From assembly GCA_012026655.1 (NCBI GenBank), contig JAAILG010001512.1, positions 1 through 64,000 of the forward strand: 64,000 nt of DNA, in the 5' to 3' direction. Positions 1 to 43,864 of this stretch are shown piece by piece. Under the pieces are notes generated by a model. The model had not been told where the DNA came from, did not search any database, and worked only from the letters and a program-made list of their open reading frames with translations. The translations under genes were made by a program, and so were the position numbers. This DNA comes from Hydrolagus affinis (taxonomy: Eukaryota). The stretch's first letter is position 1. The number at the start of each line of letters is the position of its first letter.

Positions 1-1385
1 AGATTTTTGCTTCCAAGTTCAAACTGAATGGAGTCGTGTATTTCTGCGCAGAAAACAATTCTGCGCAACTTTCACTGTCCAGGCAAACGAGGTGAAGCCA
101 AGCAACTGCAACATGGAACATGCGTGACGTATAACATGTAGCGTGTCGTGCGGTGCTGGCTCCAGGTGTGTGGTGGGAGGGGGGGGGTGGGGGGTGGGTG
201 GGGGGGGGGGGGCAATGGGTTAATAGCTGATACATTATCTCAGGTTACTCCTCATGTCTTCCTTTAAGCTGCTGAGTTCCATGTTGATGCTCGTTTGCTC
301 TCTCCCTGACCCAGCAGATGATAGGAGCAGCAGCATCAGCAAAAAAATTGGGGAACTGGGTGGGTGGGGGGTGGGGGGGGAAAGTCACTTGTTCTGTGAC
401 TCTTTGTGCTTCTCAATCTCCTGTCCCCAAGTGAGACTACTATAAAGTGCCTTTTTTTGGAAAGCAACATTCCCGGGCGGTTCAGAGATCCAGAATTCCT
501 TCAAAACTTCTGTGGGAAGTCAGCTTCGAAACGAAATCACAGTGTGGGAGGCTTCCCAACCCTCTCGCTGGCCACTCACAATCCAGGACCGGGGTCTAGA
601 GGCTGAGACCAGAGGGGACTGCAGGCTTCTGGGCCTGGAACACATCACCGTCAGGGATGTTACCAGACTAAACACCCCCTAGTCTGAGCCCTGACACCGG
701 CATTGCCTTAACGGCAGGGAACTGCTTCTCAGCTCCCCACCCAGTCGGAGGCCATTTTCCCACAGCTTCATACAAACAGTTTTAAGACTCACTGTGAACG
801 TGGAAGGGTGTGAGTGGGTGGACTGAACCTGCCACCCCCAGCGCACCCGCCCTGACACCCCCAGCGCACCCGCCCTGACACCCATCTTGTGTCGCACTCG
901 CGGGATCTCGGTGCATGTGCTTTAATGCGCTTTGAGGTGTCCTCCCCGATGTCATGAACGCAAATCTGCTGTCCTGTCTGCGGCTGGGTGTGGCTGTCTG
1001 CGGCTGGGTGTGGCTGTATGTTCTGTGGGTGTCACTGTGTATTCTGTGCATCACTCTGTGTTATGTGCGTGTTCCCATACGTTCAGTACTGGCCGCCGTG
1101 TGGGGTACTCTTGCTGTACTGTGTATGTCACTGTAGGTTCAGTGCATGTTGCTGTGTGTTGTGCGCGGAGTGTTTGTCACTGTATGTTCTGGATTGATTG
1201 GTCTCAATGTGCACCGTGTGTGTGTGTGTGTGTGTATGGGGGGGGTGGGGGAGGTGGGTGGTGGGGGGGTGGTGGGGAATGCAGGGAATGTGAAAGAGAT
1301 TATTTTTGATTTTCTTACCAAAAAAAAATTCTAATTATTCTGCTTATGTCAAACATGAATAAAATTCATCCAAAATTTTTATGGT

Positions 1386-1391
1386 TTTATT
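1386..1391 (-). terminator. Candidate polyadenylation signal AATAAA of the CARD19-like gene
   Basis: tttatt on the + strand, followed on the minus strand by T-rich sequence. Confidence 0.4.
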
Positions 1392-1759
1392 TGTGTTGGA
1401 GTTTGTGTGACTGGCGATGTCAACACGACGAGCATTGATGGAGGACTGTGTCGCAGAGGCTGTGCCTGGGCCAGAGGCTGGGTGGGTGGGCAGTTGGGGC
1501 TGGGGACCATAGGACAGTCAATCCTATGGATAATTTCTATGTGTAGGTGGGAACAACAACAACAACAAAATGAGGTTTGTATATCGCCATTCACATCGGG
1601 ATCTCTCACTGAGCTCAAAGTTGTTAATGAACAATGGAAGTCAGAGCCAGGCAGTGACAACTCAAAAGGCAAGCGGGAACAGGATTGGAATTATTTACTA
1701 TTCCCAAATGGCAAACCCTGGGATGGCGGGGGGGGTCGCACGCTGACTGCTCCACGCTT

Positions 1760-1785
1760 TCAGCATAATATCATCGGTTCCGTAT
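1760..1785 (-). CDS. Tandem CARD19-like gene, probable terminal coding exon (DTEPMILC-stop)
   Basis: Strong acceptor (tc)n-tgcag| at 1787-1786; phase-1 reading reaches TGA at 1762-1760; AATAAA about 370 nt downstream. Alternative 3' exons are possible. Confidence 0.5.
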
Positions 1786-2589
1786 CTGCAGAGAGAGAGA
1801 GAGAGAGAGAGTCACACAGGCCTCACAGTAACCGCAACAACATAAACAGCCACACAGTGCCCTTCAGGCCGGACAGTGTCTTAGTGTTAACAACAACAAA
1901 ATCACATTCACACAGCGGCTTTCACATCAGGAGGACGTCAGGGATCGGCACCCGAGCAGTGGTTGGGATCAGGAGGGAGGGAGGGAGGGAGGGAGGGAGG
2001 GTAGGAAGGTGGCTGAAGGCACGGTCAAAGTGGTGGGTCTTGAGACTGGTCTTGAAGGAGGCAAGAGAGGAGGGGGTAAGGCAGAGGGACCGTGGGATGG
2101 AGTTCCAGAGGGTGGAGGAAGAAAGGATTAAGACACACAGTGTGTACTTGTTCCCTCCTCTTCAACAATGTATATGCTCCCCAGTGATGTCATCCTCTAT
2201 GGATGACATGGGGTCAATTTCCACATGTATGCGGATGACACCCAACTCAATCTCTCTACCTCCACCCTCAACTCCAGGACCACTGTTGTCCTGCAGATTG
2301 TCTGTCACGCATCAAGTCCTGGATGAGAGCCAATTCTCTCCAGTTGACTGTCACCAAGACCAAGGTCCTTTTGTTTGGCTCCCGTCAATGCCTCCACACC
2401 TCAGGCACTTGCAGTCTGAACCTCACTGAGCTGGCAGAGGTCACTGGCATCTTGTTTAACCCTCAATTTTCCTTTCTATCCCGCATCCATGCGTTCTGCT
2501 TTCACGCACCTCCACAACATCACCCGTCCCTCTCCCTGTCTCTCTCTCTCTCACCCATCTCTGTCTCTCGGTGACAGGGAAGTTCTTAC

Positions 2590-2743
2590 CATTGAGCTTG
2601 TTGCTGGGAAGTGAAGTGTAGACGTCACTGCTGTACAGCTCCAGAGCCTCGTAGAAGAGGCGGCAGGAACGTCTTCCCTTACTCCTCACGTCTCCAAGAA
2701 ACTCCGTCACTCGCCAGTGCAGCTCCTGGTTCCTGGTCAGGTA
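2590..2743 (-). CDS. Tandem CARD19-like gene, coding exon 5 (CARD2 C-half: YLTRNQELHWRVTEFLGDVRSKGRRSCRLFYEALELYSSDVYTSLPSNKLN)
   Basis: Acceptor ctctctcggacactcag|TAC, donor G|gtaaga, 154 nt, phase 0 to 1. 17/49 identical to exon 2 ungapped; GRRSCRLFYEAL resembles CARD19 GERDCQEFYRAL. Confidence 0.85.
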
Positions 2744-3091
2744 CTGAGTGTCCGAGAGAGTCAGTGAAAGTGAGACCGAATATGGAGAGTGAGAGATTGA
2801 TGGAGAAATTGAGACTGATGTCGACAGAGTGAGATTGATGGAGAAAGTTTGGCATAAAACACATTTCGGAGCCAAGAGAGAACACTAGGGTGGGTGAGAT
2901 CTACAATGATCATCAGGAAGAGTTGGGAAAGTTAAGAATAAAAGCAAACAGAGGACCAAGAAGAAGGTAGTACTGATGGGGGACAAGTAAGTCCGTCATC
3001 CGATCTTGGGTTGATCCTGTGAATCTATTCACTCTGGGTGTATCTCCGTCCACCCTCCCTGCCCTCCATTGCCCCCTGATCCCAGCTTGGG

Positions 3092-3397
3092 TGTGGCTCC
3101 TACAGCTCAGTGGTTAGAGCACTCACCTTACAAATGTGAGACCTGTGTTCGAATCCAGGCAGATCAGGATGAAATCTCTTACTCCACACACACAAGCCTA
3201 ATAATAATTTGTCCCAAAAAAACCTCAATAATCAAAATTGGTCATTTCAATCCACGACTGTTTGTGGGGGACGCTGCTGTGCACAATTGGCTGCCGCGTT
3301 TCACCCACAAATATACAGTCAATTCACTTTACAGTGTATTCTGTGAAGTGCTTTGAGACTTCGATAAGATGTGAAAAGCTCTATATTAAATGCAAGG

Positions 3398-3432
<35 letters not shown>
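3092..3432 (+). mobile_element. tRNA-derived SINE with Deu-like core and (ATT)n tail, near full length
   Basis: A box cagctcagtgg, B box gttcgaatcc, core gctgtgcacaattggctgccgcgttt, tail aaatgcaagg(att)n; many copies in the window. Confidence 0.9.
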
Positions 3433-3434
<2 letters not shown>

Positions 3435-3659
3435 TCCAGCGCCTTGGGACATGGAAGGCTCTGTGTAAAGGTATTTTGTTCTTGTGGTTGATGAGTTGTT
3501 CTGGATCTGAAGTGCTCTATTTTGGTGCAGTGTTGAGGAGAGAGTTTGACGAGGTGCTGATGGTCTGTCGCTCCCCAAACAGGAGAAACATTAACATTTC
3601 CCAGACATTCCAGGAAAAGAATTTGCATCAATCCATCCTGTGTTCAGAAAGATTCCTAC

Positions 3660-3799
3660 CTTCTCTTTCTCTGCCTTGTTGAAGACCATCTCACTGGTCA
3701 AATGCTGGACCAGCTGTTGGAGAACGGTATCATTCAGCCTGGCACTGTTCGTCAGTTGGGGAATGTCCCTCGTCAGCTTCTCACAGTAGATCTCTGACC
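3660..3799 (-). CDS. Tandem CARD19-like gene, coding exon 4 (CARD2 N-half: GSEIYCEKLTRDIPQLTNSARLNDTVLQQLVQHLTSEMVFNKAEKEK)
   Basis: Pyrimidine-rich acceptor ctgtgtctttcccctggaaag|GG, donor AAG|gtagga, 140 nt, phase 1 to 0, only one frame open. Resembles recalled human CARD19 YCDRLVQDTPFLTGHGRLSE...EAEK. Confidence 0.85.
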
Positions 3800-3929
3800 C
3801 TTTCCAGGGGAAAGACACAGAGCAAAAATGCCATTCAGAAACTTGTTTCACCTGGATCATGTGAGAGAATCCGACATGACCTCTCTCCCCCAAGGATCCT
3901 CATCCAAACATTCATCATGTTCAGGCTTG

Positions 3930-4358
3930 ACTGCCCCAACTCTCTGCTCACAGAACATTCCTAACTCTTCCCTTCACAAGCCCTTGCATGGTCTTGCCTC
4001 TCTGACCTGCTGTCCCCTTATGAACCTCCCCGCCCCCTCCATCAAACAGGCTCCAGCCTGCTCCGTATCCCCTCACCCCCAACGCAACCCACCCTACCAT
4101 CGGCGGACGGGCTTTCAGCCTCTCTGCCCCCACACTCTGAAACCCCATCCCACAGTCCCTTCACCTCGCTCCCTCCCTCACCTCCTTCAAAGCCAGTTTC
4201 AAGACCCTCCTCTTCGACCGTGCCTTCTGTTGCCCTCCCAACTCTCTCCCGCCTCTCTCCCCTACCCTGCCCCTCTCTGTGGCTCGGATCCCGACCTGAC
4301 TGTTCAGCGCCTCCCGACGTGAAAGGCTCTCTATAAATGTAATGTTGTTGTTGTTGCT
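3930..4358 (+). mobile_element. L2-clade LINE 3' end in an intron of the CARD19-like gene
   Basis: accatcggcggacgggctttcagc...gtgaaaggctctctataaatgtaat(gtt)n. Confidence 0.8.
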
Positions 4359-4656
4359 GCCTATTGAGAGCTTCTGCCCTGTCCTGCACCAGGCTCCACA
4401 TTCCCAGGTTTCCCATCTCACTCCGGCTTCACTGGCTCCAGTTCAATAGTCTTGCTCCTCCCTGGCTCTGTTCTCTTTTCAAACCCTACAATCCTGGTCA
4501 CTCACTCCGCTCAGAGGGCACCAGCCGGGTTCCTGTCCTCCCCGTCCACCCCACCATTGGTTATTGGCTGGGCTGGGGGCATGAGGGTACTGGGGAGGCT
4601 ATACCAGGGTGGGGGGGTGAGGATGGACTGAACTGGGATGGTGTGAGGGGAGGCTA

Positions 4657-4713
4657 GGCTGGGGGAGTGAGGGTGGGCTGGGGGAGTGAGGGTGGGCTGG
4701 GGGAGTGAGGAGT
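4657..4713. repeat. 19-bp G-rich minisatellite, about 3 copies
   Basis: Unit ggctgggggagtgagggtg. Confidence 0.85.
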
Positions 4714-4786
4714 GACTGATGATCTATTTGGATGGTTCACAGGTGAGGAAAGCGATCAGACGGGAGCGGGAAGTGAAGGTACTGAC

Positions 4787-4843
4787 CCTCAGGCTCTGGG
4801 TACCATTCTGTGTCTCTGGGAGTTGGTCCATCGACCTCACAAC
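4787..4843 (-). CDS. Tandem CARD19-like gene, coding exon 3 (linker GCEVDGPTPRDTEWYPEPEG)
   Basis: Acceptor tctgctctgctccag|GT, donor G|gtcagt, 57 nt, phase 1 to 1. Keeps frame between exons 2 and 4 and could be skipped without a frameshift. Confidence 0.6.
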
Positions 4844-4907
4844 CTGGAGCAGAGCAGATCGCCTCAGTCACCGCGGACAGCTCTGGGTCAGGGGATAACC
4901 CCCCCCA

Positions 4908-5290
4908 GACACACACACACACACACACATGCACTCACACCACACACGCCAACACACACATCACACACGCAAACACACACACACTTACACTCATACCACA
5001 CACATCACGCACGCACACACATCGCACACATAGACACACACATCACACCCACACACACACCACACACACAAATATCACACACCACGCATTACACACGTAC
5101 CACACAAACTTACCCATATCACACACACTCACATACATCATGCACACACACACGAGCGAGCTCCCACCTCCCCCTGCCTGGAGACAGACAGAGGCTGCGT
5201 GTTTTGTGTTGAGTGTGTGTTTGTGTGTTGTGTGTTGTACTTGTGTGTGTGTTGTGTTTGTGTGTGTATTTGTACTTGTGTTGCATGTCC
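4908..5290. repeat. Degenerate (CA)n block followed by a degenerate (TG)n block
   Basis: CA-rich 4908-5152, TG-rich about 5198-5288. Confidence 0.9.
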
Positions 5291-5450
5291 GAGGCTGATC
5301 CCTGTGCACGCTTTGCCCACAGTTAGTAAACAGGCCAGGCCAGCGGGGGAGAGAAACTCCTCTCTCAAGATCTCTCTCTTCACCTCTCCTCTCGCCCCAC
5401 TCCCCCCACCTCAACCCCAGCCCCACTCCCAGCCTCAGCCCGAGTCTTAC

Positions 5451-5598
5451 CTGATTTTGAAGGAAGCTGACAATAAGCTCCATTGTTTGCTTCTTTAAAC
5501 TCAAAATAAAAGAGAGCGATGGCGTCTGGGCCTTTCCTCTCCACACTGTCCAGGAATGAGGTGACGCGGGAGAGGAGGGAGGTCTTGCTGTTCCTGTA
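5451..5598 (-). CDS. Tandem CARD19-like gene, coding exon 2 (CARD1 C-half: YRNSKTSLLSRVTSFLDSVERKGPDAIALFYFEFKEANNGAYCQLPSKS)
   Basis: Acceptor catacag|TAC, donor G|gtaaga, 148 nt, phase 0 to 1. YRNSKTSLLSRV resembles human CARD19 FRNPKASLRVRL (recalled); G..FY..LPS motif present. Confidence 0.85.
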
Positions 5599-5850
5599 CT
5601 GTATGTGCGAGCGATAACAGATTTGTAAGTGAGGGTGAGGATCTGGAAGCTGACCGGTTTGGTAACAAGGTGAAGGGTGTTCGGTATTTGGTGCAGGTGA
5701 GGATTGGGGAGAACAAGAGGATGAAGAGAGAGAGAGAGAGATGGTATAGAAGAGAGAGAGAGAGAGATGGTATAAAAGGGAGAGACAGAGAGACAGGGTG
5801 AAGGTAGAGAGAGAGAAAGCCCCACACACACACACACAAGGCCGTTTTAC

Positions 5851-5988
5851 CTTTTGAAACTCCACCACGTTGATGACGCCCTTGGCTTGAAGGGAGTTGA
5901 GCACAATCTCTAGATCACTGTCAGATAGACCTGTCTTGTTGGTTAAATGGAGTCTGTCCATTTGCAGATCCATGCGATATTTATCCAT
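5851..5988 (-). CDS. Tandem CARD19/BinCARD-like gene, coding exon 1 (CARD1 N-half: MDKYRMDLQMDRLHLTNKTGLSDSDLEIVLNSLQAKGVINVVEFQK)
   Basis: ATG at 5988-5986, possible acceptor taag|A at 5991-5990, phase-0 donor AAG|gtaaaa at 5850. The 46 aa align ungapped to exon 4 (14/46 identical) and show a CARD-like helix pattern. Confidence 0.8.
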
Positions 5989-6020
5989 TCTTAAGTTTTG
6001 TTAAAGTAAAAGATTTCAGC

Positions 6021-6268
6021 AGAAAGTCCCAGCCCCAGCGCGGAGTTTGAACTTGAGATCTGACTGAGGCAAGATTGGTTCAGATGAAACTGTTTTTACA
6101 GAATTCTAATCTCATATTTCCATCTCCCCCCCCTGTTGTTTTCTATATAAACCCAGACCCTTCCTTTGATTCCCCTCTTTCCCCTCTTGTTTGTTCTTAT
6201 ACTTTGATGTTTCCTGCATCAGCTACAGCTTCTGACGCATTCTAAACACCTTCTGTGTGGAGTTCCCC
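6021..6268 (-). promoter_or_regulatory. Putative promoter of the CARD19-like gene (kB-like sites, TATA-like element, PU.1-like purine boxes)
   Basis: On the minus strand: GGGACTTTCT (6030-6021), GGGGAACTCC (6268-6259), TTTATATAGAA (about 6151-6141), AAGAGGGGAA twice (about 6188-6170). Motif matches only. Confidence 0.3.
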
Positions 6269-6450
6269 TGAATTTCTAAAGGTTTTCTGACTCAAGTCCA
6301 AAATGAAATCCAACTTTCTACAGTTGAATGTTAGCAAGACCGAGGCTCTCCGGATTGGCTCGCACCTCTACACCTCAGGCACTGACTGCATCACCATCCA
6401 CCGATGCACATTCCAGCTCAACAAGCCAGTCAGGAACCCGGGCATCTTGT

Positions 6451-6706
6451 TCAGAATACACTGTAAAGTGAATTGACTGTATATTTGTGGGCAAAACGCG
6501 GCAGCCAATTGCGCACAGCAGCGTCCCCCACAAACAGTCGTGGACTGAAATGACCAATTTTATTATTGGTTTTTTGGAGGGATTATTATTAGGTGTGTGT
6601 GTGGAGTAAGGAAACTTGCCTGTAAGGTTTTGTCTGGTCCGGGAATCAAAACTGGGTCCTCTCGCCTGCGAGGTGAGCGCTGTGATCACTGAGCCACAGG
6701 AATCCA
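6451..6706 (-). mobile_element. SINE copy, tail truncated
   Basis: Reverse complement of the head and core of the 3092 element. Confidence 0.85.
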
Positions 6707-7466
6707 TTAATCAGGGACTCAAGGACAATTCCAGATTGTGACTCGGGGGTTAAGAGAGGTTCAGAAAGACTTCCTCTTCCCTGGGGGTGGGGGTGGGGGT
6801 GATTTACGGGGAGAGGGGGTACAGCAGAGATGATTGGGGGCCATTTGAAATAATTGGTCGGGGGAGAGGGGAAAGAGCTGTGATGCCACCCCACATGAAG
6901 GCGCTATTTAAATGCAAGTTGTTGTTGTTGATGGAATCGGATTCCTGCAGCAGCAAACGCCAGTGCTGTGTAAAGACGCTGATTGTCTGTTCCGGGGAAA
7001 TGATCTGCAAATTCTTCCTGTTCTCAGGCTTTTTCAAGAAAAATCTTTTGAGAATTTTCCAAACAGTCATCCACTCTGAAGTTTGCTGCTACCTTGTGGC
7101 GAATCACAGGTATTGCAATGAATAAACATCTGTAAATATTCCCTTTGTTTGATTCCAACTAATTCAAACTCCGCCGCCAGTAATACTCTGAACTCCGCAC
7201 CCCCATCACACCGGCCCCGTCAGGCTCACTGGCTCCCCATCATTCAATGAATTGGCTTCAAGATCCTCACACTCATCTACAAATCCCTACACCTTCCGGC
7301 TCCTCCCTGGCTCTCTGCCCTGTTTACTCTCCACTCCACTCCCCGCTGCCTCCACCCGACTCGCTCTGGATACCACTGTGTAATCACCATTGGTTTTGGG
7401 AACTCCACCCTCTGGCATATATTCCGCACTTTCAGATTCACACCTGAAGACCTTTCTCTTGAACCG

Positions 7467-7753
7467 TGGAGTCATGTAGCTTCGTGGTTAGGGCGTTTCT
7501 CTTACTCCACACGCCGCTGGTACCTTGACTGGGGAATCCCTTCTCCGTGAGTAATAAAAACACGTGTGAATCACTCCGAAAAAATGTAGTCATTCAACTA
7601 GCGACTGCTTGTGGGACACCGCTGTGCGCAATTGACTGCTGCATTTCGCTTACAAATAGTTAATCCACTTTACAGTTTATTCTGTAAAGCACCTTGAGAT
7701 TCTCAATAATAAGATGCTGATAAGATGCTATATTAAATGCCAGGATTATTATT
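7467..7753 (+). mobile_element. Degenerate SINE copy
   Basis: gtggagtcatgtagc head remnant, core, aggattattatt tail. Confidence 0.75.
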
Positions 7754-9186
7754 CTGTGGGGAGGTGGTGGGGGGGGGACTGGCCACAGGCCGCACAAACA
7801 CTTCACTGCAATTCACACGTCAGATTTAAGTGCAATAAATAGCACTTTCCTGAATGACACAGAACCTGGAGTCGGTTGAGTCTGATATCCCAAATGTGAG
7901 TGTTTCATTCCGCATCCGGGTTTAACTTCTTTTTTTTTTTAAAATGACTTATTTACATCTGTAATTCAATATAACAGGAAAAACGTGCCGGACACCCAGA
8001 GTTATTACAGCTACACTTTGCTTGTGGCTGTGATTGGGGGTGACAGCAGTCAGTGTCAGTGTAGCCGGCTCTGTTTATTTGAGGGAAGGCAGGGGAGGGT
8101 CTGCCTGGCATCACCAACAATTTGATAACGTTTGGCGAAAAGGCGGAATGTTGCATTTCTATAACACATCAAAACATCGCGAGGCACTTCACAGTCTGTA
8201 GGTCAACTGGCCGAGAGTCAGTCGCTCCACCCTCAGCCAGTCACAAAGTTGTGGGTTCTTGCCCCACTCTGAACTCACAGACTTGGGTTGGTGTATTTGT
8301 CGGTGGGAGGGGTTGTGCTTTGTGTGAGATGGTAACAGCCTGTTCAGGGGACATTAACGATCCCATGGTACGATTTGACAAGAGAAAGGAGTTTCTCTCT
8401 CCTGGTGACCTGGTTAGCATTGAGGTCACTCTCTCCAAGACTGTCTGTGGGACATTGCTGTGAGCAAATTGGCTGCTATAATCACTACAAAACAGTCACT
8501 GCATGGTACAGTAAATCATCTAAACCCTTATTATTAAAGACCACTGTGTGTGGTGACTGTATTTTGCGAGGACCACAGTAGTTATGTGGCACACAGCAAT
8601 GTCCCACAAACAGCTGTGAATTTATTGAAAGCTCTGTTACTGTCCGTCTCAACCACTCCGCCTCCTCAGCCATCGCCAGATCACACAGGGAGACCTTCGT
8701 CTTCAACTCTTCCTGGGGTCACCTCCTTTCTCTCTCCCTTTTCCCGCTCGGCCTCAAGCTCCACCTGTGAGACCCTGCCCCGCGAAGGGCGCTGTGTAAA
8801 TACAACTTACTGTTTGCGGCAGGGCTGAGGCTTGCACTCCTGATTCAGTCAATGGACCTTGAACTCTCAGAATGAACCATCACCATCATCCTCCGCTCAC
8901 ACGAAACAGAAAAGTTTATTTTAATAGGAAACTCAAGGTGCAGGCAGTGCGGATCCATCTGCCCTCGGACTGTGTGGGAGTGAAGCTCTGTGTCTTTCTG
9001 CCACGTCCTTTGCCAACCTGAGTGTGTAACACACACCAACAGAGGCAATCATCAAGCAAGGGCAAAACCATGTGTCTTGAGGAGGTGAATCCAGTGACTA
9101 TGAACACACATGTGGCTGTGAGTTCTGCACAAACATACATATCAAGATGAACAGAAGGCCCTTAAACATGTACAGAAGCGACAGCG

Positions 9187-26730: not shown

Positions 26731-27637
26731 TCTGGAATCCCATGGCTTAGTGGTTAGCGTACTTACATTGTAAGCAAGAGGATCCAGGTACAATTGCCAG
26801 TAGGAAGCCGGTTGTTAGTTGATTGGTGGATCAGGTTGTGGGAATAAACAGTAACTGCTGTTTTGCAATAGTAAATTCCCACAAATAGTCACGAGGTGAG
26901 TGACAATAACAATATATATATATATATTTACACATTTAATATGGTTAATTAATTTAGATGGTTGCGGCCACAAAACTTGGCAAACTTCCCTCTCTTTTGC
27001 AATAGCACCACAGGATCCCAAACATTTATCCCAAGAGTTAGAGCAAGCATCAATTTTAACCTCTCATTTGAAGGATAAGATTTCCAACAACGTAATGCAT
27101 CCGTTTACTCTACGGGGGAGTGGGGGAGAGAGGAAGGTGGGGGGAGGATAGCTGATAGTGACTTCAAGTTAGGTCCTGTAAGGCTTGAATCCGCTAGCTT
27201 CTCAGAGGTATTATAATAATTCTTGCATTGATAAAGTGCCTTATCACGTCTTTGAGACCCCTCAAAGCAGTGTCCCACAAACAGTCGTGGATTGAGTGAC
27301 CAAATTAGTATTATTTATTTATTTTATAAAAAGGGATTATTACCCCGACAATCTGAATCCTATAGCTCAGTGGTTAGCTCACCTTGCAAACAAGAGACCT
27401 GGGTTTGATTCCCAGCAGAGTGAAGCCATGGGCAAGTTTCCTTACTATACATATTTACTATAGAGAATCCCTCAAGAAAAAACCCAATAATAAATTGGCC
27501 AATTCAAATGATTATTGAATTTTTATTATTATTATTATTATTCGATGCGAGTGCTCTAACCACTTAGCTACAGAGGTGAAGGTCGCACCGACTCAGTAGG
27601 CTATAAAGCCTTGGTGTAGAGAGTGAATGTTACTCAC

Positions 27638-27946
27638 CAATATTACAGGCCATGTGCTGCTGTTGATGTTGATGGTGATGCTGATGATGTTGTTGATGCT
27701 GCTGGTTTGGCTGGTGTTGTGGGTGTTGGTGTTGATGGTGCTGGTGATGGGCATGCTGGATGTGGAGCTGATGGGGCACCAGTTGCACTTGTGTCCCTCC
27801 TCCCCCTCCCAAGCTGCTGGCATGGCTATTGGTCAGATTATTTTGGCCGCTGTGTGGGTGGGTGCTGACAGTGCTGCTGGGCGAGTGCTGGTAGGAACAG
27901 GACGTGTGGGTTGGCTGCGATGCTTCAGAAGACAGGTTAATCATTC
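27638..27946 (-). CDS. foxj3: foxj3 coding exon 7 (Ser-rich then His/Gln-rich)
   Basis: cttttcag|GA ATG, G|gtgagt; 309 nt, phase 1-1; [20 protein letters not shown] conserved with FOXJ3. Confidence 0.94.
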
Positions 27947-28364
27947 CTGAAAAGAACGAAATACAAATACTGTCACACAAAAAATTAGTTCATATATCAA
28001 ACGAACATTCAAATGGGTGTCTGTATTGGTTACTCTAATTATAGAGATTCCTTCGAGATCTGTCTCAAGATCAACTGTGCCATCGATCACAATCCTACCC
28101 CTACCCTCCCAATCTCCACCCCTCCTAATCCCAACCATCAACTCCAGTGCTGATCCCTTAAGGTCCAGTGCCTTGGGACATCCTACTGATATGAAAGGCA
28201 CTATACAAGTGTAATTTGTTGTTGTTGGTTAGTAAGCTTAGACTGACACAAAGCTCTTCCTCACTCTGTCCTTCCTACCTTAAAGCTGAATTTAAAACAG
28301 GTTATATTAACGCCCTCCTCTTCAACTACTGTGTGCTTTCTGGGGAAGAATGAAAAATGCCTAA

Positions 28365-31722: not shown

Positions 31723-32316
31723 GACACCTGCGGAAACCCAACACCATGCTTAAAAGTATCCAAACCAAGCTGAGAATTCCATGCAACCCTGCACAATGAA
31801 ATTTTTGGGATAGATTGTTGGAATGGATTGCACGCGTTCTCCCTGCTTATCTAACTCAGGGAAGTATTCGGTGTAGGTTGGCAAGAGCCAAGGCTTGGGG
31901 ACCCTAGAATGTGTGTTGTTGTACTACTGGAATCTAACCAAATAAAACTGCATAGGTTGCCATTGATATCAACAACAAGTGAGGAACAAGCTCAGTAATG
32001 CTAGAGAAGATTGTAAAGGGTGTGGAGGAGCAGGAGCAAAATGGGATTTGAAGAGTTGAAGCGATGCGAGCTGGTGGAGCCTGGAAATGATGGGGAGACG
32101 GAGTCTGCATAACCTGGGTTCAGAGTGAATTCAGGCTATAAAGATTTATATGAATCGAAGCTGAAAAGCTGGAAAGAAGACTGAGGAACCGCGTGGAGAA
32201 ATCTTGCCTTGAGGTGACAAATGCATGAAACTCATTCAAAACATCAAACCATCATCTCTACCCCATCCCAACGTTTCCATTTCGATCCACAATTTTAGCA
32301 TCTTTCACAGACCTAC

Positions 32317-32400
32317 CCTTTCTCCGGACCGTGGCCTCTTCTTTGGCCGAGTGGGTAGTGTATCCTCCTTTGGGTTTGTGTCAATGGCCCAGTATGAACC
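32317..32400 (-). CDS. foxj3: foxj3 coding exon 3 ([28 protein letters not shown])
   Basis: tttttcag| and |gtaggt; end of forkhead domain plus basic NLS-like KKRPR. Confidence 0.96.
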
Positions 32401-35400
32401 CTGAAAAACAGCAGCACAAAGTAGGAACAAACCAAAATATATAACTTAGAACAAGCAAACGTTGCGCAATAAAGCTCTTGTTAAGTGCATCCTATCTGTA
32501 TTGCTATAAAAGAGATCATTGTTCTCATTGTAACACAACCTGATGCTTGGACGTGTACTGAGGAAACGTTTTTCAACACATGTGATGTTCTATTTACAGC
32601 TGAAGTAAAAAACACAATTATTTTGGACAATTTTCTCCCTGCCTCAAAAAAGCAATTGTGGATAAAATGGGCATTTTTTAAATAACTTTCTCCAGGCCTT
32701 TCCGTGGGTCCACTGGTGGTGGAGAAGCAGTCATCAAAAATAAACCTCCAATGCATCTTGCACATGTGAAAAAGTCAAAAAGGAACAGTTTGTGGTATAT
32801 AAACTGAGCACATTATGGCATTAATGAGGAAAGTGCCCCCCATTCCCCCCTCCACTCAATAAAATTGGTCATCAATTTGATGGAATTAAACTTTTATTAA
32901 ATTCCAAACTGCTCCAATAATTAGTTATAAACTTGTACAGATTTTTCTGCTTTCCACCCAGCCATCAAAATATGGTTCTTACTTATAGCCATAAAAAAAT
33001 TCTTTTGCATTAGAAAATATTCTCTTGACATTAAAGTTACTGAATAAACAGGCATGTCATAACCACTCTGGAGTAGCACAACCACTCTGATAGCTAATGA
33101 TTAAACATCTAAACCATCTTTAAGTACAAATAGGTCCATCAGTAAGATAAGAAACAAGACAAACAATGTCTGCCAGTCGTCTCTGAAGATCAGGCAGGCT
33201 CCAAGCACACTGCTAATCTGCCCCAAATTAATGTCTGTAGCACTGAATTATTACTTTGCTTTTAAGCACATTTTTAAAACAAAATCATAGCATCTCCTAT
33301 TTCTCGGATCTGACAACTCTGTCAACAATGTAAGAACCTCCCTTGGAACAAAAACATACAAAGAAAGAGGAAAGAATGTGCACCTCTACGACCTTCTGAC
33401 CCGGCCATTTCCTTTGCTCAGCAAACTGGCTTGCTTCATGTCCCCACCACCCCATCGGCCTTGCCTCTCCCCAGAATTCCTTTTTGGAATTGCGCTCAAA
33501 ATAAATTTAAACTACAGCAAGGAAAGCAACAACACACACAAAAGGGTGTGGACCTCCAGCGAGACATGTCAGACCTGTTAGAGGACAACTCAGGCAGGTT
33601 TGCCTGTTAGCACTGGCAGCATGAAGCCCATATAAAGAGCACCAGCCCTCCCTCCCAATTTCCAGCACCACCTTACAGCGGGCTAACACAATTGAGCATC
33701 TTGCTCATTCTTTCCAAGTGTTGAGCAATCAAAAAACCTTTGACTTAAAAATCCTAAATTTGGGTCAAGGGCAAGTCACAACTTGTCAACAATTTTGCCC
33801 AAAGTCGTGCAGGTGAATGAACGACACAAACTAATAGGCTCTCAAAATGAACTCTCCAGTTAATATTGAAACAAACTCCAATCCAATTGATTTATATCTA
33901 AATGAAGTACGTTTCCATGGCTGAGTTTAAGAGGTATTCATTTCCACAAAAAGCTTCTTTCACATTGAGCTCAACCCTTTAAAACTATTACGTGCTTTAC
34001 AATGTGAGCTACCAAAGGGGGCAAACTAAATGGTAAAGTCTGTCTTCCAGACTCCAAGTCTCTACCGTCCTGGATTTGACACATAGACGATCAGACTCCT
34101 TTGCCAAATATCATTTAAAACAAGCAATCAGGCAATGTTCTGCTCAATGTTACTGTATAAATATTGTGATGTATAAGGTAAGAGCTTTGCACAAACTACC
34201 ATGAGAATGGTAACGAAAGTGGAGTTAGGAAAAATGGTGGGAGCAAAGCCACTGGTCGGGCACATCTCCCAGCCTCTAAACACCATTAGTACGTCTACAC
34301 CGATTTACATACAGCAATTTACAGATTGTACCGCACGGATATAGTAAAAAATATCTAACAGCATTTCACATGGGACACCATTTCACTAATTCTAAAAAAA
34401 CATTGAGACATTTATGTATGTGCAGAACATGAGTAACCAAGAGATGTGTAAATGGATGCATGGAATGTAATACATTACTAATTTACATTTATGCCGCACT
34501 TCCTGATGCGTACTGATGGTTGCTGTAGTGCCATCAGTATTCTTAATGTACTGCTAAAGAATGCCTGTGAGAGCATTGCTGTACCACACGTAGAAGATGC
34601 ACATTTAAAATTTACAGCGCCTCCCCAAACACCTTAATGTCAATAAACAAGGTAGCAATATTGTCTCTGGTGCTATGTGCACTGTTAAGAGACAGTTCCT
34701 GTGTGCCATCACAGACAGCAAAACCCTAGGGCAATCCAATGTTGGAAGTGGTCCCATTTTCCAGCAAGTTCTGTCCGTTCAACCATTATGGGTCACCAAA
34801 GCACTTGCCAGACCGAACATACTTTCCTAACAACTGAGGAAGGGGTGGCAATCAATCTCATGGTCAACAGTTGTGACTGCGAGCTTGCAAATGTATAGAT
34901 GTCTTGAATGTTGTTCCCGATGCTTTGAATTGACTCCACAGTATGAAGTGGGCGGTTTCTGCAGAACCCGGGAACTGAGCCAGCTTTGTACAAATATTTC
35001 CAGAAACCAGCTCTGCAATATAAACGTACCAATTGGGTACGTTGAAATTGATTTGAATTTTCAGAGTGAATTCAGATTGAGGTGTATATATATATATCTA
35101 TATCTATAATGAGGAGGAAACCTTGCGTTTCTCTGACATAGGAGGGGAAGTGGTGCTGAACATCCATACTATCAGACAGCAACGATCAAACCAGAGAGAA
35201 CACAAAGAAATATTGCTGCAAATTGTTTTAAAAATAAGATGAATGGTCGCCCACCAACATATTATTGTACTGGGGAGAATCTAAGAAATACAGCATTTTG
35301 TAACACTGCTATTTCTTAATTAACAGTTTCTGATAATTAATATCCATTAAATGACAAACAATTTAGAGATTTAATAGACTATGGGGTTAAAACATCCTTT

Positions 35401-36024: not shown

Positions 36025-36183
<159 letters not shown>

Positions 36184-41404: not shown

Positions 41405-42245
41405 ATAAGAACATAAAAACATAAGAATTAGGAGCAGGAATAGGCCATTCGGCCCTTCGAGCCTGCTCCGCCATTCAATAAGATCATGGCTGATCTTCTC
41501 ACCTAACTCTAATTACCTGCCCTATCACCATATCCTNNNNNNNNNNNNNNNNNNNNNNNNNNNNNNNNNNNNNNNNNNNNNNNNNNNNNNNNNNNNNNNN
41601 NNNNNNNNNNNNNNNNNNNNNNNNNNNNNNNNNNNNGCCTTGAAAATGTTCAAGGACTGAGCATCTACAGCCTTCTGGGGTAGTGAATTCCATAAATTCA
41701 CTACCCTCTGAGTGAAGAAATGTTTCCTCAACTCTGTTCTAAAAGGCTGACCCTTAATTTTAAGACTGTGACCCCTGGTTATAGATTCTCCTACCAGGAG
41801 AAACAGTTCCTCAGTGTCTACTTTAGCCCTTTAAGAATCTTACATGTTTCAATAAGAACCCCCTAATTCTTCTGTACTCTAGAGAATACAACCCTAGTTT
41901 ATTCAACCTATCCTCATAGGTCAGTCCCCTCATCCCAGGAACTAACCTAGTGAATCTACGCTGCAGCCCCTCTAAGGCAAGTATGTCCTTTTTTAAATAA
42001 GGAGACTAAAACTGCACACAATACTCTTGGTGCGGTCCCACCAAAGCCCTATACAGTTGCAGCAAGACTTCCCTATTCTTGTACTCTAAACCTTTTGAAA
42101 TGAACGCTAGCATGCTGTTCGCCTTCTTAGTTGCTTGCTGCACCTGCAAACTAACTTTTTGGGACTGGTGTACAAGGACACCCAAATCCCTTTGAACACT
42201 AACACTATCTAATTTCTCCCCTTCTAGAAAATAAACTGGGATTGA
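41405..42245 (-). mobile_element. CR1 LINE 3' fragment (spans a 100-N gap)
   Basis: ORF2 C-terminal peptides RDLGVLVH..KANSMLAFI..LYRALVGPHQEYCVQF and RKHFFTQRVVNLWNSLP; shark-type 3' end gaatggcctattcctgctcctaattcttatg. Confidence 0.92.
41537..41636. other. Assembly gap (100 N)
   Basis: Run of N. Confidence 1.
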
Positions 42246-43033
42246 TATCTCATCATTCAGACGTAGAAAAACAACTCGCATTTATATAGCCAACTTTATT
42301 CCGGACAGTGTCTCAGAAAGCTTAACTGTTGCTGTAAAAGTCACAACAACAACTTCAACAACTACTTGTTTTTATATGGCACCTTTCACACTGGTAGCGT
42401 CCCAGAGCGCCACAACAAACAAACTGATGTATGGTGGTGGTCCTGTTATTTATACTAATATAGAAGGGGAAATTTCAGCATATAGTGTGGTAATTATCAC
42501 TGATGATAATTATGATAGTTCAAAATGTGATTGAAAGCAATCAAAGTGATGCCCCCCACACCCCCACTTCAATACAATGGCTGAGGCTCAAAAGTTTGGA
42601 TCATCACCATCCTGGTTCTTACCAGTCACAGTGGCCTCAGAACCCAGAATTTTGGTGCCACTTTACAAGAACAAAGATGTTGACTATTAGAATTTTTTGA
42701 GCCACATTCAAGCAGTGCTGAAGTCCAGGGTTGGGTGTCCTGTATGGCATCCCTTCTGATCATATTTTTAGTAATCTATCAACAACAACAACTACTTTGA
42801 TTTATATAGCGCCCTCCACTCCGGATGGTGTCTCAGAGCGCTTCACAATAGAGGATCCCGGGACCGAGCCAGGGATAGGGATAAAAAGGTAACCAAAGGC
42901 GTGGTCGAAGAGAAAGGTCTTTAACTGTGACCTGAAACTGGGAAGGGAGGGGGTGAGGCGAAGGGAGTGAGGAAGAGAGGTACAGAGGGACGAGAGAATC
43001 CCCGATTGGCTTGCCTTTGTCCTGGTGACTCAC

Positions 43034-43354
43034 CTTCCAGCCGCTGCCAGCTTCTCTGTAGTATGGGAAGTTATCACAGATCCACTGATATATCTCACTG
43101 AGTGTCATTTTCTTCTTCGGAGAGCTGTTGATAGCGAAGGTTATGAGACTAGCATAACTGTATGGCGGTTTGCCATCTTTGTTCTGTGTGTCCTGATCCA
43201 GTGTGGTGTTAGGGTCCAGGAGAGCATTTTTCTTAGCCACCCCACCACCAGCAGCCACACTCTGGGCAGCGTCCGCTTTCTGGATGGCTGCTCTCATAGT
43301 TAGCTGTGGCAGCCAGTCCATGGACGTCAGGCTGCTCTCCAGCTCTGATGTCAT
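43034..43354 (-). CDS. foxj3: Forkhead box J3, coding exon 1 ([18 protein letters not shown]...forkhead N-part to GSGWK)
   Basis: [46 protein letters not shown] matches FOXJ3; donor AAG|gtgagt; in-frame TGA 7 codons upstream; strong acceptor T-tract-ag at 43496-43495 gives a 140-nt leader. Confidence 0.97.
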
Positions 43355-43864
43355 CCTGTCCGAATAAGTCCTTCAACAACAGCCAGTAATCTGTAATCCA
43401 CAACCACTGGGCGACAACCAGAGTCCCAGTGTTTAATACAGGGATTCCACACTGCCAAGGTGTCCTCGCAAGATAGATGAAATCCAATCTTACTCTAAAA
43501 AAAAAGGTTATTGTTGGTTAGTAAATTTCAGAAACTACAGAAAATGCATTGATAAAGAATTCATTGAGCATGTGAAAGTTATAGTTTTGTTGCAATGACG
43601 CCCGCCGCTGCTTTAAATAATTTTGCACAAAATACAGACAATTCATTCTACAGTATACTATGTGAAGGGCTTTGAGACATCTCGAAGACGTGATAAGGCG
43701 CTATATCAATTGCAAGGATTATTATATTATTCTCCATCAAGCTAAAGAGCTGCATTCTCCAGGTGAGCTTTTAGGTGCAAGTTTGGCGCACTCGGTAGCC
43801 CTTTTGCCTCTCAGTACAAAGCTGGGGGAACCCTCTTCCAATGGTCACTTTGTCTATTCAAACA

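What the first reader, a model, noticed from the sequence alone, without database searches (positions are those of the whole stretch)
1760..5988. Hidden six-exon gene encoding two tandem CARD19/BinCARD-type CARDs
Seen: six minus-strand exons (5851-5988, 5451-5598, 4787-4843, 3660-3799, 2590-2743, 1760-1785) join with GT-AG sites and matching phases into a 663-nt ORF (220 aa). It contains two repeats of about 95 aa that align with no gaps (31/95 identical), each split by a phase-0 intron at the same K|Y position and ending in LPS before a phase-1 intron. Known (recalled): human CARD19/BinCARD has one CARD, MTDQTYCDRLVQDTPFLTGHGRLSE...EAEKFRNPKASLRVRL...GERDCQEFYRAL...LPS, and lies next to NINJ1 rather than FOXJ3. 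Repeat 1 keeps YRNSKTSL and repeat 2 keeps YCEKL.RD.P.LT...RL and G.R.C..FY.AL. Inference: an old internal exon-block duplication made a double-CARD CARD19 paralog, possibly an undescribed innate-immune adaptor or decoy. Tandem CARDs are otherwise best known from NOD2 and RIG-I/MDA5.
Basis: partly seen in the sequence, partly recalled or inferred. Interest (0 to 1): 0.85.

Follow-up and report, generated by a model that had tools for sequence, protein, structure and literature searches.

The report
Cartilaginous-fish gene with two CARD19-like CARDs
The six proposed exons are a real, conserved gene for a small protein made of two CARD19-type interaction domains; gene-prediction pipelines already model it in sharks and chimaeras, but nobody has studied it.

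Summary
Observation confirmed. Six minus-strand exons (5988-1760) have an ATG in good context, five GT..AG introns, phases 0/1/1/0/1, a TGA stop and 663 coding nt. The internal repeat is real: 14/43 and 17/47 identities without gaps.

Searched exon by exon, the pieces line up end to end with a 220-aa RefSeq model, "uncharacterized protein LOC103172130 isoform X1" of Callorhinchus milii, at 159/217 identities. That ortholog has two Pfam CARD stretches (62.3 bits). It folds into two six-helix bundles, and the closest solved structure is human BinCARD/CARD19.

Relatives were found in 7 cartilaginous-fish species, in two paralogous clades that both carry tandem CARDs. All are auto-named "uncharacterized" or "CARD19-like". 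Six literature searches found no paper on them.

The window gene has no membrane anchor and lies downstream of FOXJ3 exons on the same strand. It is best read as a soluble, CARD-only, two-headed paralog of CARD19.

RNA support is weak: low, strand-specific depth enriched over exons, and no junction reads listed. Function is untested. It is a new variant of a known kind, not a hidden novelty, and of moderate interest.

The parts
5851..5988 (-). Exon 1: ATG (5988-5986) and the first half of CARD 1 (46 codons); donor GT follows, phase 0
   Evidence: 30/46 identical to residues 1-46 of C. milii P0012. Relatives' CARD HMM positions 3-52, E 1.1e-09.
5451..5598 (-). Exon 2: second half of CARD 1 (YRNSKTSL...QLPSKS), ends in phase 1
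   Evidence: Pfam CARD E 0.0014, 19.0 bits, profile 42-79/85, below the 23.9-bit cut-off. 35/49 identical to P0012 47-95. HMM 50-97, E 5.4e-13.
4787..4843 (-). Exon 3: 57-nt linker cassette (CEVDGPTPRDTEWYPEPE), phase 1 to phase 1
   Evidence: 13/18 identical to P0012 97-114. The equivalent stretch is below pLDDT 50 in the ortholog model. It is skipped in isoform P0020 relative to P0021 of Scyliorhinus torazame.
3660..3799 (-). Exon 4: first half of CARD 2 (SEIYCEKLTRDIPQLTN...), ends in phase 0
   Evidence: The only PDB hits are BinCARD 4fh0/4dwn, residues 5-37, E 0.024. 33/46 identical to P0012 116-161. HMM 3-50, E 5.7e-11.
2590..2743 (-). Exon 5: second half of CARD 2 (YLTRNQELHWRVTEFL...SLPSNKLN), ends in phase 1
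   Evidence: The only PDB hits are BinCARD 4dwn/4fh0, residues 58-99, E 0.0051. Pfam CARD E 0.0071, 16.8 bits. 44/51 identical to P0012 162-212. HMM 49-97, E 7.8e-16.
1760..1785 (-). Coding part of the last exon: (D)TEPMILC and TGA (1762-1760)
   Evidence: The tail is conserved: C. milii DMEPLQLC, Heptranchias GDEPMQLR, Carcharodon DVEQMQLC. 4/7 identical to P0012 215-220.
1370..1759 (-). Probable 3' UTR, with AATAAA at 1391-1386 on the minus strand. The lower bound is approximate and inferred.
   Evidence: Sequence. In run X4, first-mate-on-+ depth is 3.3 (bin 1594-1792) and 1.8 (bin 1395-1593), then 0 in bin 1196-1394.

Best explanation
This is an intact, expressed-at-low-level protein-coding gene of a cartilaginous fish. 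Its closest relative is the elephant-shark gene LOC103172130. It encodes a 220-residue soluble protein made of two CARD19/BinCARD-type CARDs and nothing else. The two six-helix bundles are joined by a flexible linker of about 20 residues, encoded by a small cassette exon.

Shown: the gene structure, the orthology, the CARD fold of both halves (on the ortholog), the specific kinship to the BinCARD CARD, the absence of a hydrophobic anchor, and conservation across chimaera and shark lineages.

Inferred mechanism (about 40% for this particular mode): the protein has no enzymatic, sensor or membrane domain, so it can act only through CARD-mediated binding. I expect a bivalent CARD-only regulator that bridges or caps assemblies formed by CARD19-type or other CARD partners. 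That would make it a two-headed counterpart of single-CARD decoys such as ICEBERG. Skipping of the linker exon would tune the spacing of the two heads.

It is a paralog of CARD19, not its ortholog. The second chondrichthyan tandem-CARD clade (B) is nearer to tetrapod CARD19.
For: Gene model.

Orthology: the six pieces, searched separately, align end to end to P0012 at 1-46, 47-95, 97-114, 116-161, 162-212 and 215-220, with 159/217 identities. Identity to four elasmobranch orthologs is 103-109/217.

Intron positions: isoform breakpoints in relatives fall at 4 of the 5 window intron positions. P0021 marks exon 1/2, P0020 against P0021 marks 2/3 and 3/4, and P0003 against P0012 marks 4/5.

CARD identity:
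- Pfam PF00619 scores 62.3 bits with 2 stretches in P0012, and 53.9 bits with 2 stretches in P0001.
- The family profile against PDB puts BinCARD first, at E 1.3e-14 (profile 3-94) and 9.1e-14 (profile 118-210). The next hit is at 3.9e-06.
- The AlphaFold2 model of P0012 has pLDDT 79.5, six helices at 4-89 and helices spanning 118-213, and a linker (97-116) below pLDDT 50.
- Foldseek's top 4 of 277 matches are BinCARD, with TM 0.88-0.93 and rmsd 1.1-1.4.
- VIA-align gives Z 18.4, rmsd 0.9 over 93 residues for model 3-95. Model 114-213 matches caspase-1, ICEBERG and NOD1 CARDs at Z 13-15.5.

No anchor: the best 19-residue Kyte-Doolittle mean is at most 1.01 in the window's four CARD-exon pieces and at most 0.94 in 5 clade-A orthologs. 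It is 2.33 in a mammalian CARD19 model.

RNA: in run X4, depth is on one direction only. It is 1.8, 3.3, 3.69, 0.65 and 2.73 in the five exon/UTR bins, against 0-0.77 in seven repeat-free non-exon bins.
Against: - No exon-exon junction read was listed, and depth is very low. In run X3 the exon enrichment is not evident.
- Single exon pieces do not reach Pfam's cut-off. Exon 1 and exon 4 gave no CARD hit in Pfam, and exon 1 gave no PDB hit.
- The fold and the full-length profile results come from the ortholog P0012 (73% identical), not from the window's own joined protein. I did not build that protein.
- Three of the 4 listed exon differences between the window and the contigs of run X1 change the amino acid. 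That gives no sign of strong constraint at short range, although 260 differences were not shown.
- No partner, localisation or phenotype is known. The CARD of mammalian CARD19 has no agreed CARD partner (PMC8997538, abstract and passages), so the decoy or bridge role is an analogy.
- pTM 0.46 leaves the relative position of the two CARDs undefined.
Confidence: 0.85

Rival explanations
1. This gene is the species' true CARD19 ortholog. It would have gained a second CARD, lost the membrane anchor and moved next to FOXJ3.
For: BinCARD is the only or best solved relative of exons 4 and 5 and of the family profile. My searches reached no separate single-CARD chondrichthyan CARD19, but their sensitivity and length windows were limited.
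Against: - In the domain tree the two tetrapod-type CARD19 CARDs group with the N-CARD of the other clade (B), at support 92/85, not with this clade.
- Clade B, not clade A, has a model with a hydrophobic tail (P0022, Kyte-Doolittle 2.09) and carries the automatic name 'CARD19-like'.
- Clade A and clade B genes lie on different contigs in 4 of 4 species that have both.
- The defining anchor is absent here.
Confidence: 0.08
2. The tandem CARDs arose twice, by independent internal duplications in clade A and clade B, or were homogenised by gene conversion. They would not come from one ancient exon-block duplication.
For: - The AU test does not reject a tree with all clade-A CARDs (N and C) together (delta lnL 2.47, p 0.129).
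- The branch joining the C-type CARDs has only 80/81 support.
- Both CARDs of clade A lack the same two residues that both CARDs of clade B keep (alignment).
Against: - The best tree pairs N with N and C with C across the clades.
- Both clades have the same overall layout: CARD, a linker that can be skipped, then CARD. P0017 against P0014 shows this in clade B, and P0020 against P0021 in clade A.
Confidence: 0.25
3. The locus is a decaying or untranslated copy, that is a pseudogene or a transcribed relic. In that case the open frame would be a leftover.
For: RNA depth is very low and no junctions were listed. Three of the 4 listed differences from run X1 are nonsynonymous.
Against: - All six pieces are open and all 10 splice dinucleotides are canonical.
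- The start context is good, and the length and stop match the C. milii protein (220 aa).
- The invariant family columns listed for the six relatives (for example K-G, F-Y and L-P-S in each CARD) can also be read in the window's exon peptides.
- Identity to relatives as distant as sharks is about 50% over the full length.
Confidence: 0.04
4. The two CARDs form one rigid signalling unit, as in the RIG-I/MDA5 2CARD, and seed filaments of a downstream CARD adaptor. On this reading the protein is an activator, not a decoy.
For: The tandem-CARD structures of MDA5 and RIG-I appear among the structural matches that span both domains.
Against: - Those two-domain superpositions have rmsd 10.5-11.4 A and about 15-18% identity.
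- The linker is predicted to be disordered and pTM is 0.46.
- The linker exon is optional in relatives.
- No sensor domain is attached.
Confidence: 0.15

Closest known systems
CARD19 / BinCARD (human structures 4DWN and 4FH0; mouse Card19)
   Same: The CARD sequence and fold are the closest of all solved structures. Exon 4 and exon 5 each hit only BinCARD, in collinear positions. The family profile scores E 1e-14 for each CARD. VIA-align gives Z 18.4, rmsd 0.9. The motifs F-Y-x-A-L, C-x-x-F-Y and L-P-S are shared.
   Different: - It has two CARDs instead of one.
- It has no transmembrane segment or distal C-terminus. Mouse CARD19 needs these to reach the outer mitochondrial membrane (PMC8997538, abstract and passages).
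- The neighbour is FOXJ3, not NINJ1 (PMC8547626, abstract).
- About 30% identity.
RefSeq/UniRef predicted proteins of cartilaginous fishes: LOC103172130 (C. milii), LOC121288306 (Carcharodon carcharias), unnamed models of Heptranchias perlo, Heterodontus francisci and Scyliorhinus torazame (clade A)
   Same: They have the same architecture, the same length (198-220 aa) and the same conserved tail. Identity is 73% (C. milii) and about 50% (sharks), collinear with the six exons.
   Different: They come from other species. They are computer predictions without a functional name, and no paper was found. The window's own protein is not in the searched collections: no row marked as the window's.
Clade B tandem-CARD paralogs: LOC103185066 (C. 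milii), LOC144681671 (Cetorhinus maximus), and 'CARD19-like' models of Pristiophorus, Heptranchias and S. torazame
   Same: Two CARD19-type CARDs with a linker. Found only in cartilaginous fishes in my searches.
   Different: - About 32% identical to the window's pieces: 67/217 and 70/217.
- A longer linker.
- The N-CARD groups with tetrapod CARD19 (92/85).
- One isoform model has a hydrophobic tail.
- Located on other contigs.
CARD-only proteins (ICEBERG/CARD18, CARD16, CARD17; viral CARD-only proteins)
   Same: They are small proteins made only of CARD, which work, where studied, by binding other CARDs (titles and abstracts of PMC7555848, PMC3775265 and PMC10151391, seen in the listing). ICEBERG and a 'CARD-only protein' (6j52) are among the sequence and structure matches.
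   Different: Those have a single CARD and are caspase-1-like, not BinCARD-like. From recall, the mammalian ones are recent primate duplicates at the caspase-1 locus.
Tandem CARDs of RIG-I, MDA5 and NOD2
   Same: Two consecutive CARDs at the N-terminus.
   Different: Those are heads of large sensors with helicase or NACHT-LRR bodies. Here no other domain follows. Superposition over both domains is poor (rmsd 10.5-11.4 A).

Membership tests
CARD domain (Pfam PF00619, death-fold superfamily) | Match to the Pfam CARD model above its gathering score | tested here: inconclusive
   Window pieces, searched singly as half-domains: exon 2 scores 19.0 bits and exon 5 scores 16.8 bits, below the 23.9 cut-off. 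Exons 1 and 4 give no CARD hit. The collinear ortholog P0012 scores 62.3 bits with 2 stretches. The joined window protein was not built.
CARD domain (Pfam PF00619, death-fold superfamily) | Six-helix bundle that superposes on solved CARDs | tested here: met
   Tested on the ortholog P0012. The model has six helices at 4-89 and helices spanning 118-213. 90 of 277 aligned chains have Z of 8 or more, and nearly all chains shown are CARDs. Both model ranges, 1-97 and 114-211, are covered.
CARD19 / BinCARD | CARD closer to BinCARD than to any other CARD | tested here: met
   (BinCARD is the only hit). (E 1e-14 against 3.9e-06 for the next hit). (top 4 matches). (Z 18.4 against 15.9 for the next).
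CARD19 / BinCARD | A single CARD | tested here: not met
   There are two CARDs: exons 1-2 and exons 4-5. Orthologs show 2 Pfam stretches.
CARD19 / BinCARD | C-terminal transmembrane domain plus distal C-terminus that target the outer mitochondrial membrane (PMC8997538) | tested here: not met
   The maximum 19-residue hydropathy is at most 1.01 in the window's four CARD-exon pieces and at most 0.94 in clade A orthologs. It is 2.33 in a mammalian CARD19 model. The protein ends a dozen residues or so after the second LPS.
CARD19 / BinCARD | Position next to NINJ1 (mouse: PMC8547626, abstract) | tested here: inconclusive
   The only neighbour I identified is FOXJ3: forkhead exons at about 43.3, 36.1 and 32.4 kb on the same strand. 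The window was not scanned for a ninjurin gene. The sequence below coordinate 1 is not in the window.
RLR/NOD2-type tandem CARD module | Two CARDs followed by a helicase or NACHT sensor body | tested here: not met
   The reading frame stops at 1762-1760, eight codons into the last exon. The orthologs are 198-220 aa with no other Pfam domain.
CARD-only proteins (COPs) | The protein consists of CARD only and acts by CARD-CARD binding | not testable with these tools
   The architecture fits, since there is nothing but CARDs and a linker. Binding and its effect need experiments.

The most novel reading that the evidence does not exclude
A tandem CARD was the ancestral state of the jawed-vertebrate CARD19 family. 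On this reading cartilaginous fishes keep two ancient paralogs on different chromosomes. One is a soluble copy beside FOXJ3 (this gene). The other (clade B) can carry a membrane tail and is the counterpart of CARD19. The single-CARD, mitochondrial CARD19 of tetrapods would then be a reduced descendant that lost its second CARD. If so, the missing CARD partner of mammalian CARD19 may originally have been its own second CARD or its soluble sister protein.
Probability: 0.25. Interest if true: 0.6.

Novelty: new variant of a known kind. Interest (0 to 1): 0.45.

Why it matters
CARD19 is one of the least understood CARD proteins. Its reported BCL10 role was not reproduced, and it is now linked to mitochondrial cristae organisation (PMC8997538).

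A conserved family in which the CARD19-type CARD occurs twice, without an anchor, gives a natural handle on what this CARD binds. It offers a soluble bivalent probe for partners. It also provides an evolutionary series (tandem soluble, tandem with an optional tail, single anchored) for asking which surfaces are conserved.

For shark and chimaera immunology it adds an unnamed CARD-only gene pair to the death-fold repertoire. It also shows that automatic names ('uncharacterized', 'CARD19-like') hide one coherent family.

The practical gain for this genome is a verified gene model.

Tried and rejected
- Pfam on single exon pieces gave only sub-threshold CARD hits for 2 of 4 pieces. The 18-aa linker piece is too short for the tool.
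- PDB searches with exon 1 and exon 2 gave nothing useful.
- The search for homologous proteins with P0012 alone found only 3 proteins.
- The same tool with the N-CARD of clade B found 7 of 11 candidates, all clade B. It did not reach true CARD19, so the question of a separate single-CARD card19 in cartilaginous fishes stays open.
- The half-CARD profile search of 1.84 billion representatives gave 10 hits at E of 0.001 or less. Apart from one mis-modelled mammalian CARD19 with a duplicated segment (P0007), none with two stretches lay outside cartilaginous fishes. A 51-column profile is too weak to show absence in bony fishes.
- AU tests rejected neither independent duplications (p 0.129) nor placing CARD19 with the C-type CARDs (p 0.13).
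- Read laying did not list the predicted junctions, and its single call is used.
- tRNA and Rfam scans of 1-8000 found nothing.
- Our-findings look-ups gave nothing that bears on this locus.
- Rejected: a nested alternative exon set of FOXJ3. The gene has its own ATG and stop and an independent ortholog.
- Rejected: a prenylation-type tail. The terminal Cys is present in the window and in 3 of 5 clade A orthologs and does not form a CAAX motif.
- Supplementary files of papers were not opened. They are unlikely to bear on this gene.

Full report
1. WHAT IS IN THE SEQUENCE

- Their lengths are 138, 148, 57, 140, 154 and 26 nt, 663 nt in all.
- Every one of the five introns begins GT and ends AG.
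- The phases are 0, 1, 1, 0, 1.
- The start is AAGAATGG, with an in-frame TAA five codons upstream.
- The frame closes with TGA at 1762-1760.

Exon 1 and exon 4 share 14/43 residues (E 8e-05). Exon 2 and exon 5 share 17/47 (E 1e-07). Neither alignment has gaps. Both repeats are cut K|Y by a phase-0 intron and end in LPS before a phase-1 intron.

As a control against chance I built an HMM from the CARDs of relatives only and ran it over all 2,152 stop-free segments (20 aa or more, six frames) of the 64-kb window. Only exons 1, 2, 4 and 5 matched, at E 1.1e-09, 5.4e-13, 5.7e-11 and 7.8e-16. Each pair splits the model at position 50. The next best segment had E 0.24.

2. EXON-BY-EXON SEARCHES

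I never joined the pieces, so no search or fold of the window's full protein was made.

Pfam:
- CARD for exon 2: E 0.0014, 19.0 bits.
- CARD for exon 5: E 0.0071, 16.8 bits.
- Both are under the 23.9-bit cut-off, as expected for half-domains.
- Exons 1 and 4 gave no CARD hit.

Search of 177,635 PDB sequences:
- Exon 5 hit only human BinCARD/CARD19 (4dwn/4fh0, residues 58-99, E 0.0051).
- Exon 4 hit only the same protein (residues 5-37, E 0.024). The two hits are in collinear order.
- Exon 1 hit nothing, and exon 2 gave only a chance match at E 1.6.

3. RELATIVES

I aligned exon 5 with exon 2 and searched that profile against 1.84 billion representatives. It gave 10 proteins at E of 0.001 or less. 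Five were small cartilaginous-fish proteins, and four of those matched twice.

Cluster look-up and further searches named the relatives:
- Clade A: "uncharacterized protein LOC103172130" of Callorhinchus milii (isoform X1, 220 aa, P0012; also under an older accession), LOC121288306 of Carcharodon carcharias, and unnamed models of Heptranchias perlo, Heterodontus francisci and Scyliorhinus torazame.
- Clade B: LOC103185066 of C. milii, LOC144681671 of Cetorhinus maximus, and models of Pristiophorus japonicus, H. francisci, H. perlo and S. torazame. Some of these are auto-named "caspase recruitment domain-containing protein 19-like".

All 13 hits of the family-profile search are from cartilaginous fishes.

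The window's six pieces align end to end to P0012 at 1-46, 47-95, 97-114, 116-161, 162-212 and 215-220, with 159/217 identities. They align to four shark orthologs with 103-109/217 identities. The window therefore comes from a relative of the elephant shark, and its protein is not itself in the collections.

Isoform breakpoints in the relatives' models fall at four of the window's five intron positions. The short tail (D)TEPMILC is conserved as DMEPLQLC, GDEPMQLR and DVEQMQLC.

4. DOMAIN IDENTITY, TESTED ON THE ORTHOLOG

- P0012 scores 62.3 bits on Pfam CARD with two stretches.
- The family profile (A2, six proteins) finds BinCARD first in the PDB. It does so once through profile positions 3-94 (E 1.3e-14) and once through 118-210 (E 9.1e-14). 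The next entry is at 3.9e-06 and other CARDs are at 6e-04 or worse.
- AlphaFold2 on P0012 with A2 gives mean pLDDT 79.5 and two six-helix bundles (4-89 and 118-213). The linker 97-116 is below pLDDT 50, and pTM is 0.46.
- Foldseek's four best of 277 matches are BinCARD chains (TM 0.88-0.93, rmsd 1.1-1.4 A, 29-32% identity). The rest are other CARDs.
- VIA-align gives Z 18.4, rmsd 0.9 A over 93 residues for model 3-95 against BinCARD. It gives Z 13-15.5 for model 114-213 against caspase-1, ICEBERG and NOD1 CARDs.
- Superpositions on RIG-I/MDA5 tandem CARDs across both domains are poor (rmsd 10.5-11.4 A).

Both halves are therefore CARDs of the CARD19 type, joined by a flexible linker. They do not form a rigid 2CARD unit as far as the model can tell.

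5. WHAT IT IS NOT

[quoted passage not shown] Its reported BCL10 function was not reproduced, and it binds MICOS/MIB components (PMC8997538, abstract and found passages). Mouse Card19 lies immediately next to Ninj1 (PMC8547626, abstract).

The window protein has no hydrophobic segment. The best 19-residue hydropathy is at most 1.01 in the four CARD-exon pieces, and at most 0.94 in five clade A orthologs, against 2.33 in a mammalian CARD19 model. It has two CARDs rather than one. It lies downstream, on the same strand, of FOXJ3 forkhead exons at about 43.3, 36.1 and 32.4 kb.

I could not tell whether FOXJ3 ends before 6 kb or whether this gene is nested in it.

6. HISTORY

A maximum-likelihood tree used 20 CARD domains: N and C halves of 5 clade A and 4 clade B proteins, plus two tetrapod-type CARD19 fragments, P0007 and P0008. 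The window was left out because that would need joining.
- A_N, A_C, B_N and B_C are each monophyletic.
- The C-types join at 80/81 support.
- CARD19 sits with B_N at 92/85.

This favours one duplication before the A/B split and makes clade B the nearer kin of CARD19. However, AU tests reject neither independent duplications (p 0.129) nor CARD19 with the C-types (p 0.13).

One clade B isoform model (P0022) has a hydrophobic tail (2.09). A and B lie on different contigs in 4 of 4 species that have both.

7. EXPRESSION

One run of contigs (X1, a slightly different organism or haplotype) and three single-cell poly-A RNA runs (X2-X4) were laid on 201-6150.

In X4, reads over the gene lie in one direction only (first mate on +, which in most stranded libraries means minus-strand RNA):
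- Depth is 1.8, 3.3, 3.69, 0.65 and 2.73 in the five bins holding the 3' UTR, exon 6, exon 5, exon 4 and exon 2.
- Depth is 0, 0.77, 0.68, 0, 0, 0.07 and 0 in the seven repeat-free bins without a complete exon.
- X2 shows the same pattern at lower depth. X3 does not show it clearly.
- Depth stops below 1395, just beyond a minus-strand AATAAA at 1391-1386.

No predicted junction is among the 15 joints listed (699 were not shown). Splicing in this species is therefore supported only indirectly.

Four exon differences between X1 and the window were listed. Three change the residue and one does not. This sample is too small to read.

8. HOW IT MOST LIKELY WORKS

Shown: a small soluble protein of two CARD19-type CARDs and a flexible linker that relatives can skip. 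It has been conserved since before chimaeras and sharks separated.

Inferred: with no other domain it must act by binding. I take it to be a bivalent CARD-only regulator that bridges or caps assemblies of CARD partners (about 40%). Alternatives are a filament-seeding 2CARD-like activator (about 15%) or a partner of the clade B/CARD19 protein at mitochondria. No experiment bears on this yet.

9. NOVELTY

Six full-text searches found no paper on these genes or on a tandem CARD19-type protein. The search terms were:
- CARD19/BinCARD;
- the LOC numbers and 'CARD19-like';
- CARD19 + shark;
- tandem CARD + cartilaginous;
- CARD + elephant shark + CARD-only;
- BinCARD + paralog.

The one BinCARD mention in PMC5978004 is a reference-list entry.

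The architecture is nevertheless already in public protein sets as computer predictions in seven species. The gene is therefore not hidden in the wider sense. It is an unnamed, unstudied family: a new variant of a known kind. Interest is moderate (0.45).

Noticed in passing
window 42836-43372, 36025-36183, 32308-32445 (minus strand): Three stop-free segments encode the N-terminus and the forkhead domain of a FOXJ3-like protein ([18 protein letters not shown]...[14 protein letters not shown]..., [47 protein letters not shown]). The strand is the same as the CARD gene's. A His/Gln-rich ORF at 27630-27980 (minus) may be a further exon. I did not establish where FOXJ3 ends or whether the CARD gene is nested in it.
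   Followed up: partly
window 400-1195: A much more strongly covered transcript (depth up to 64 in X4) lies in the opposite read direction to the CARD gene. It would be plus-strand RNA if the CARD reads are sense. Molecule ends pile up at 402 and 410. It has no convincing ORF, and it converges on the CARD gene's 3' end. It may be a non-coding RNA or the UTR of a gene outside the window.
   Followed up: no
window 1889-2389, 2987-3583, 3982-4379: Very high-copy interspersed repeats sit inside introns 3, 4 and 5. Summed contig depth reaches 16 million in X1, and thousands of RNA reads lie on both directions. An inverted pair lies at 1889-2070 and 4172-4355. An (AAT)n run lies near 3395-3440. No tRNA or Rfam match was found in 1-8000.
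   Followed up: partly
proteins P0004/P0013/P0014/P0017, P0005/P0015, P0018/P0022, P0019, P0023, P0024 (not in the window): A second tandem-CARD clade (B) exists in six cartilaginous-fish species. It has several alternative C-termini, and one model (P0022, Heterodontus) has a hydrophobic tail. Its N-CARD groups with tetrapod CARD19 (92/85). It may be the real CARD19 counterpart of these fishes.
   Followed up: partly
window 1769, 2613, 2705, 3692: The contigs of run X1 differ from the window at these exon positions: I>M, S>L, synonymous, and E>K. The RNA reads of X2-X4 follow the window at all four places (0 of 1 to 5 reads show the other letter). X1 thus looks like a slightly diverged relative or haplotype.
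   Followed up: partly
window 42006-42281 (minus strand): A 91-aa ORF (…LGVLVHQSQKVSLQVQQATKKANSMLAFISKGLEYKNREVLLQLYRALV…) looks, from recall, like the tail of a retrotransposon reverse-transcriptase ORF. It lies next to the N run at 41537-41636.
   Followed up: no
C-CARD, window exon 5 (codon 27) and alignment A2 column C188: The Cys before x-x-F-Y is invariant in the second CARD of all six aligned family members. It aligns with the Cys in ERDCQEFY of human BinCARD. The first CARD of clade A has lost it. From recall, BinCARD's cysteines were reported to be oxidisable, so this may be a redox-sensitive position.
   Followed up: no
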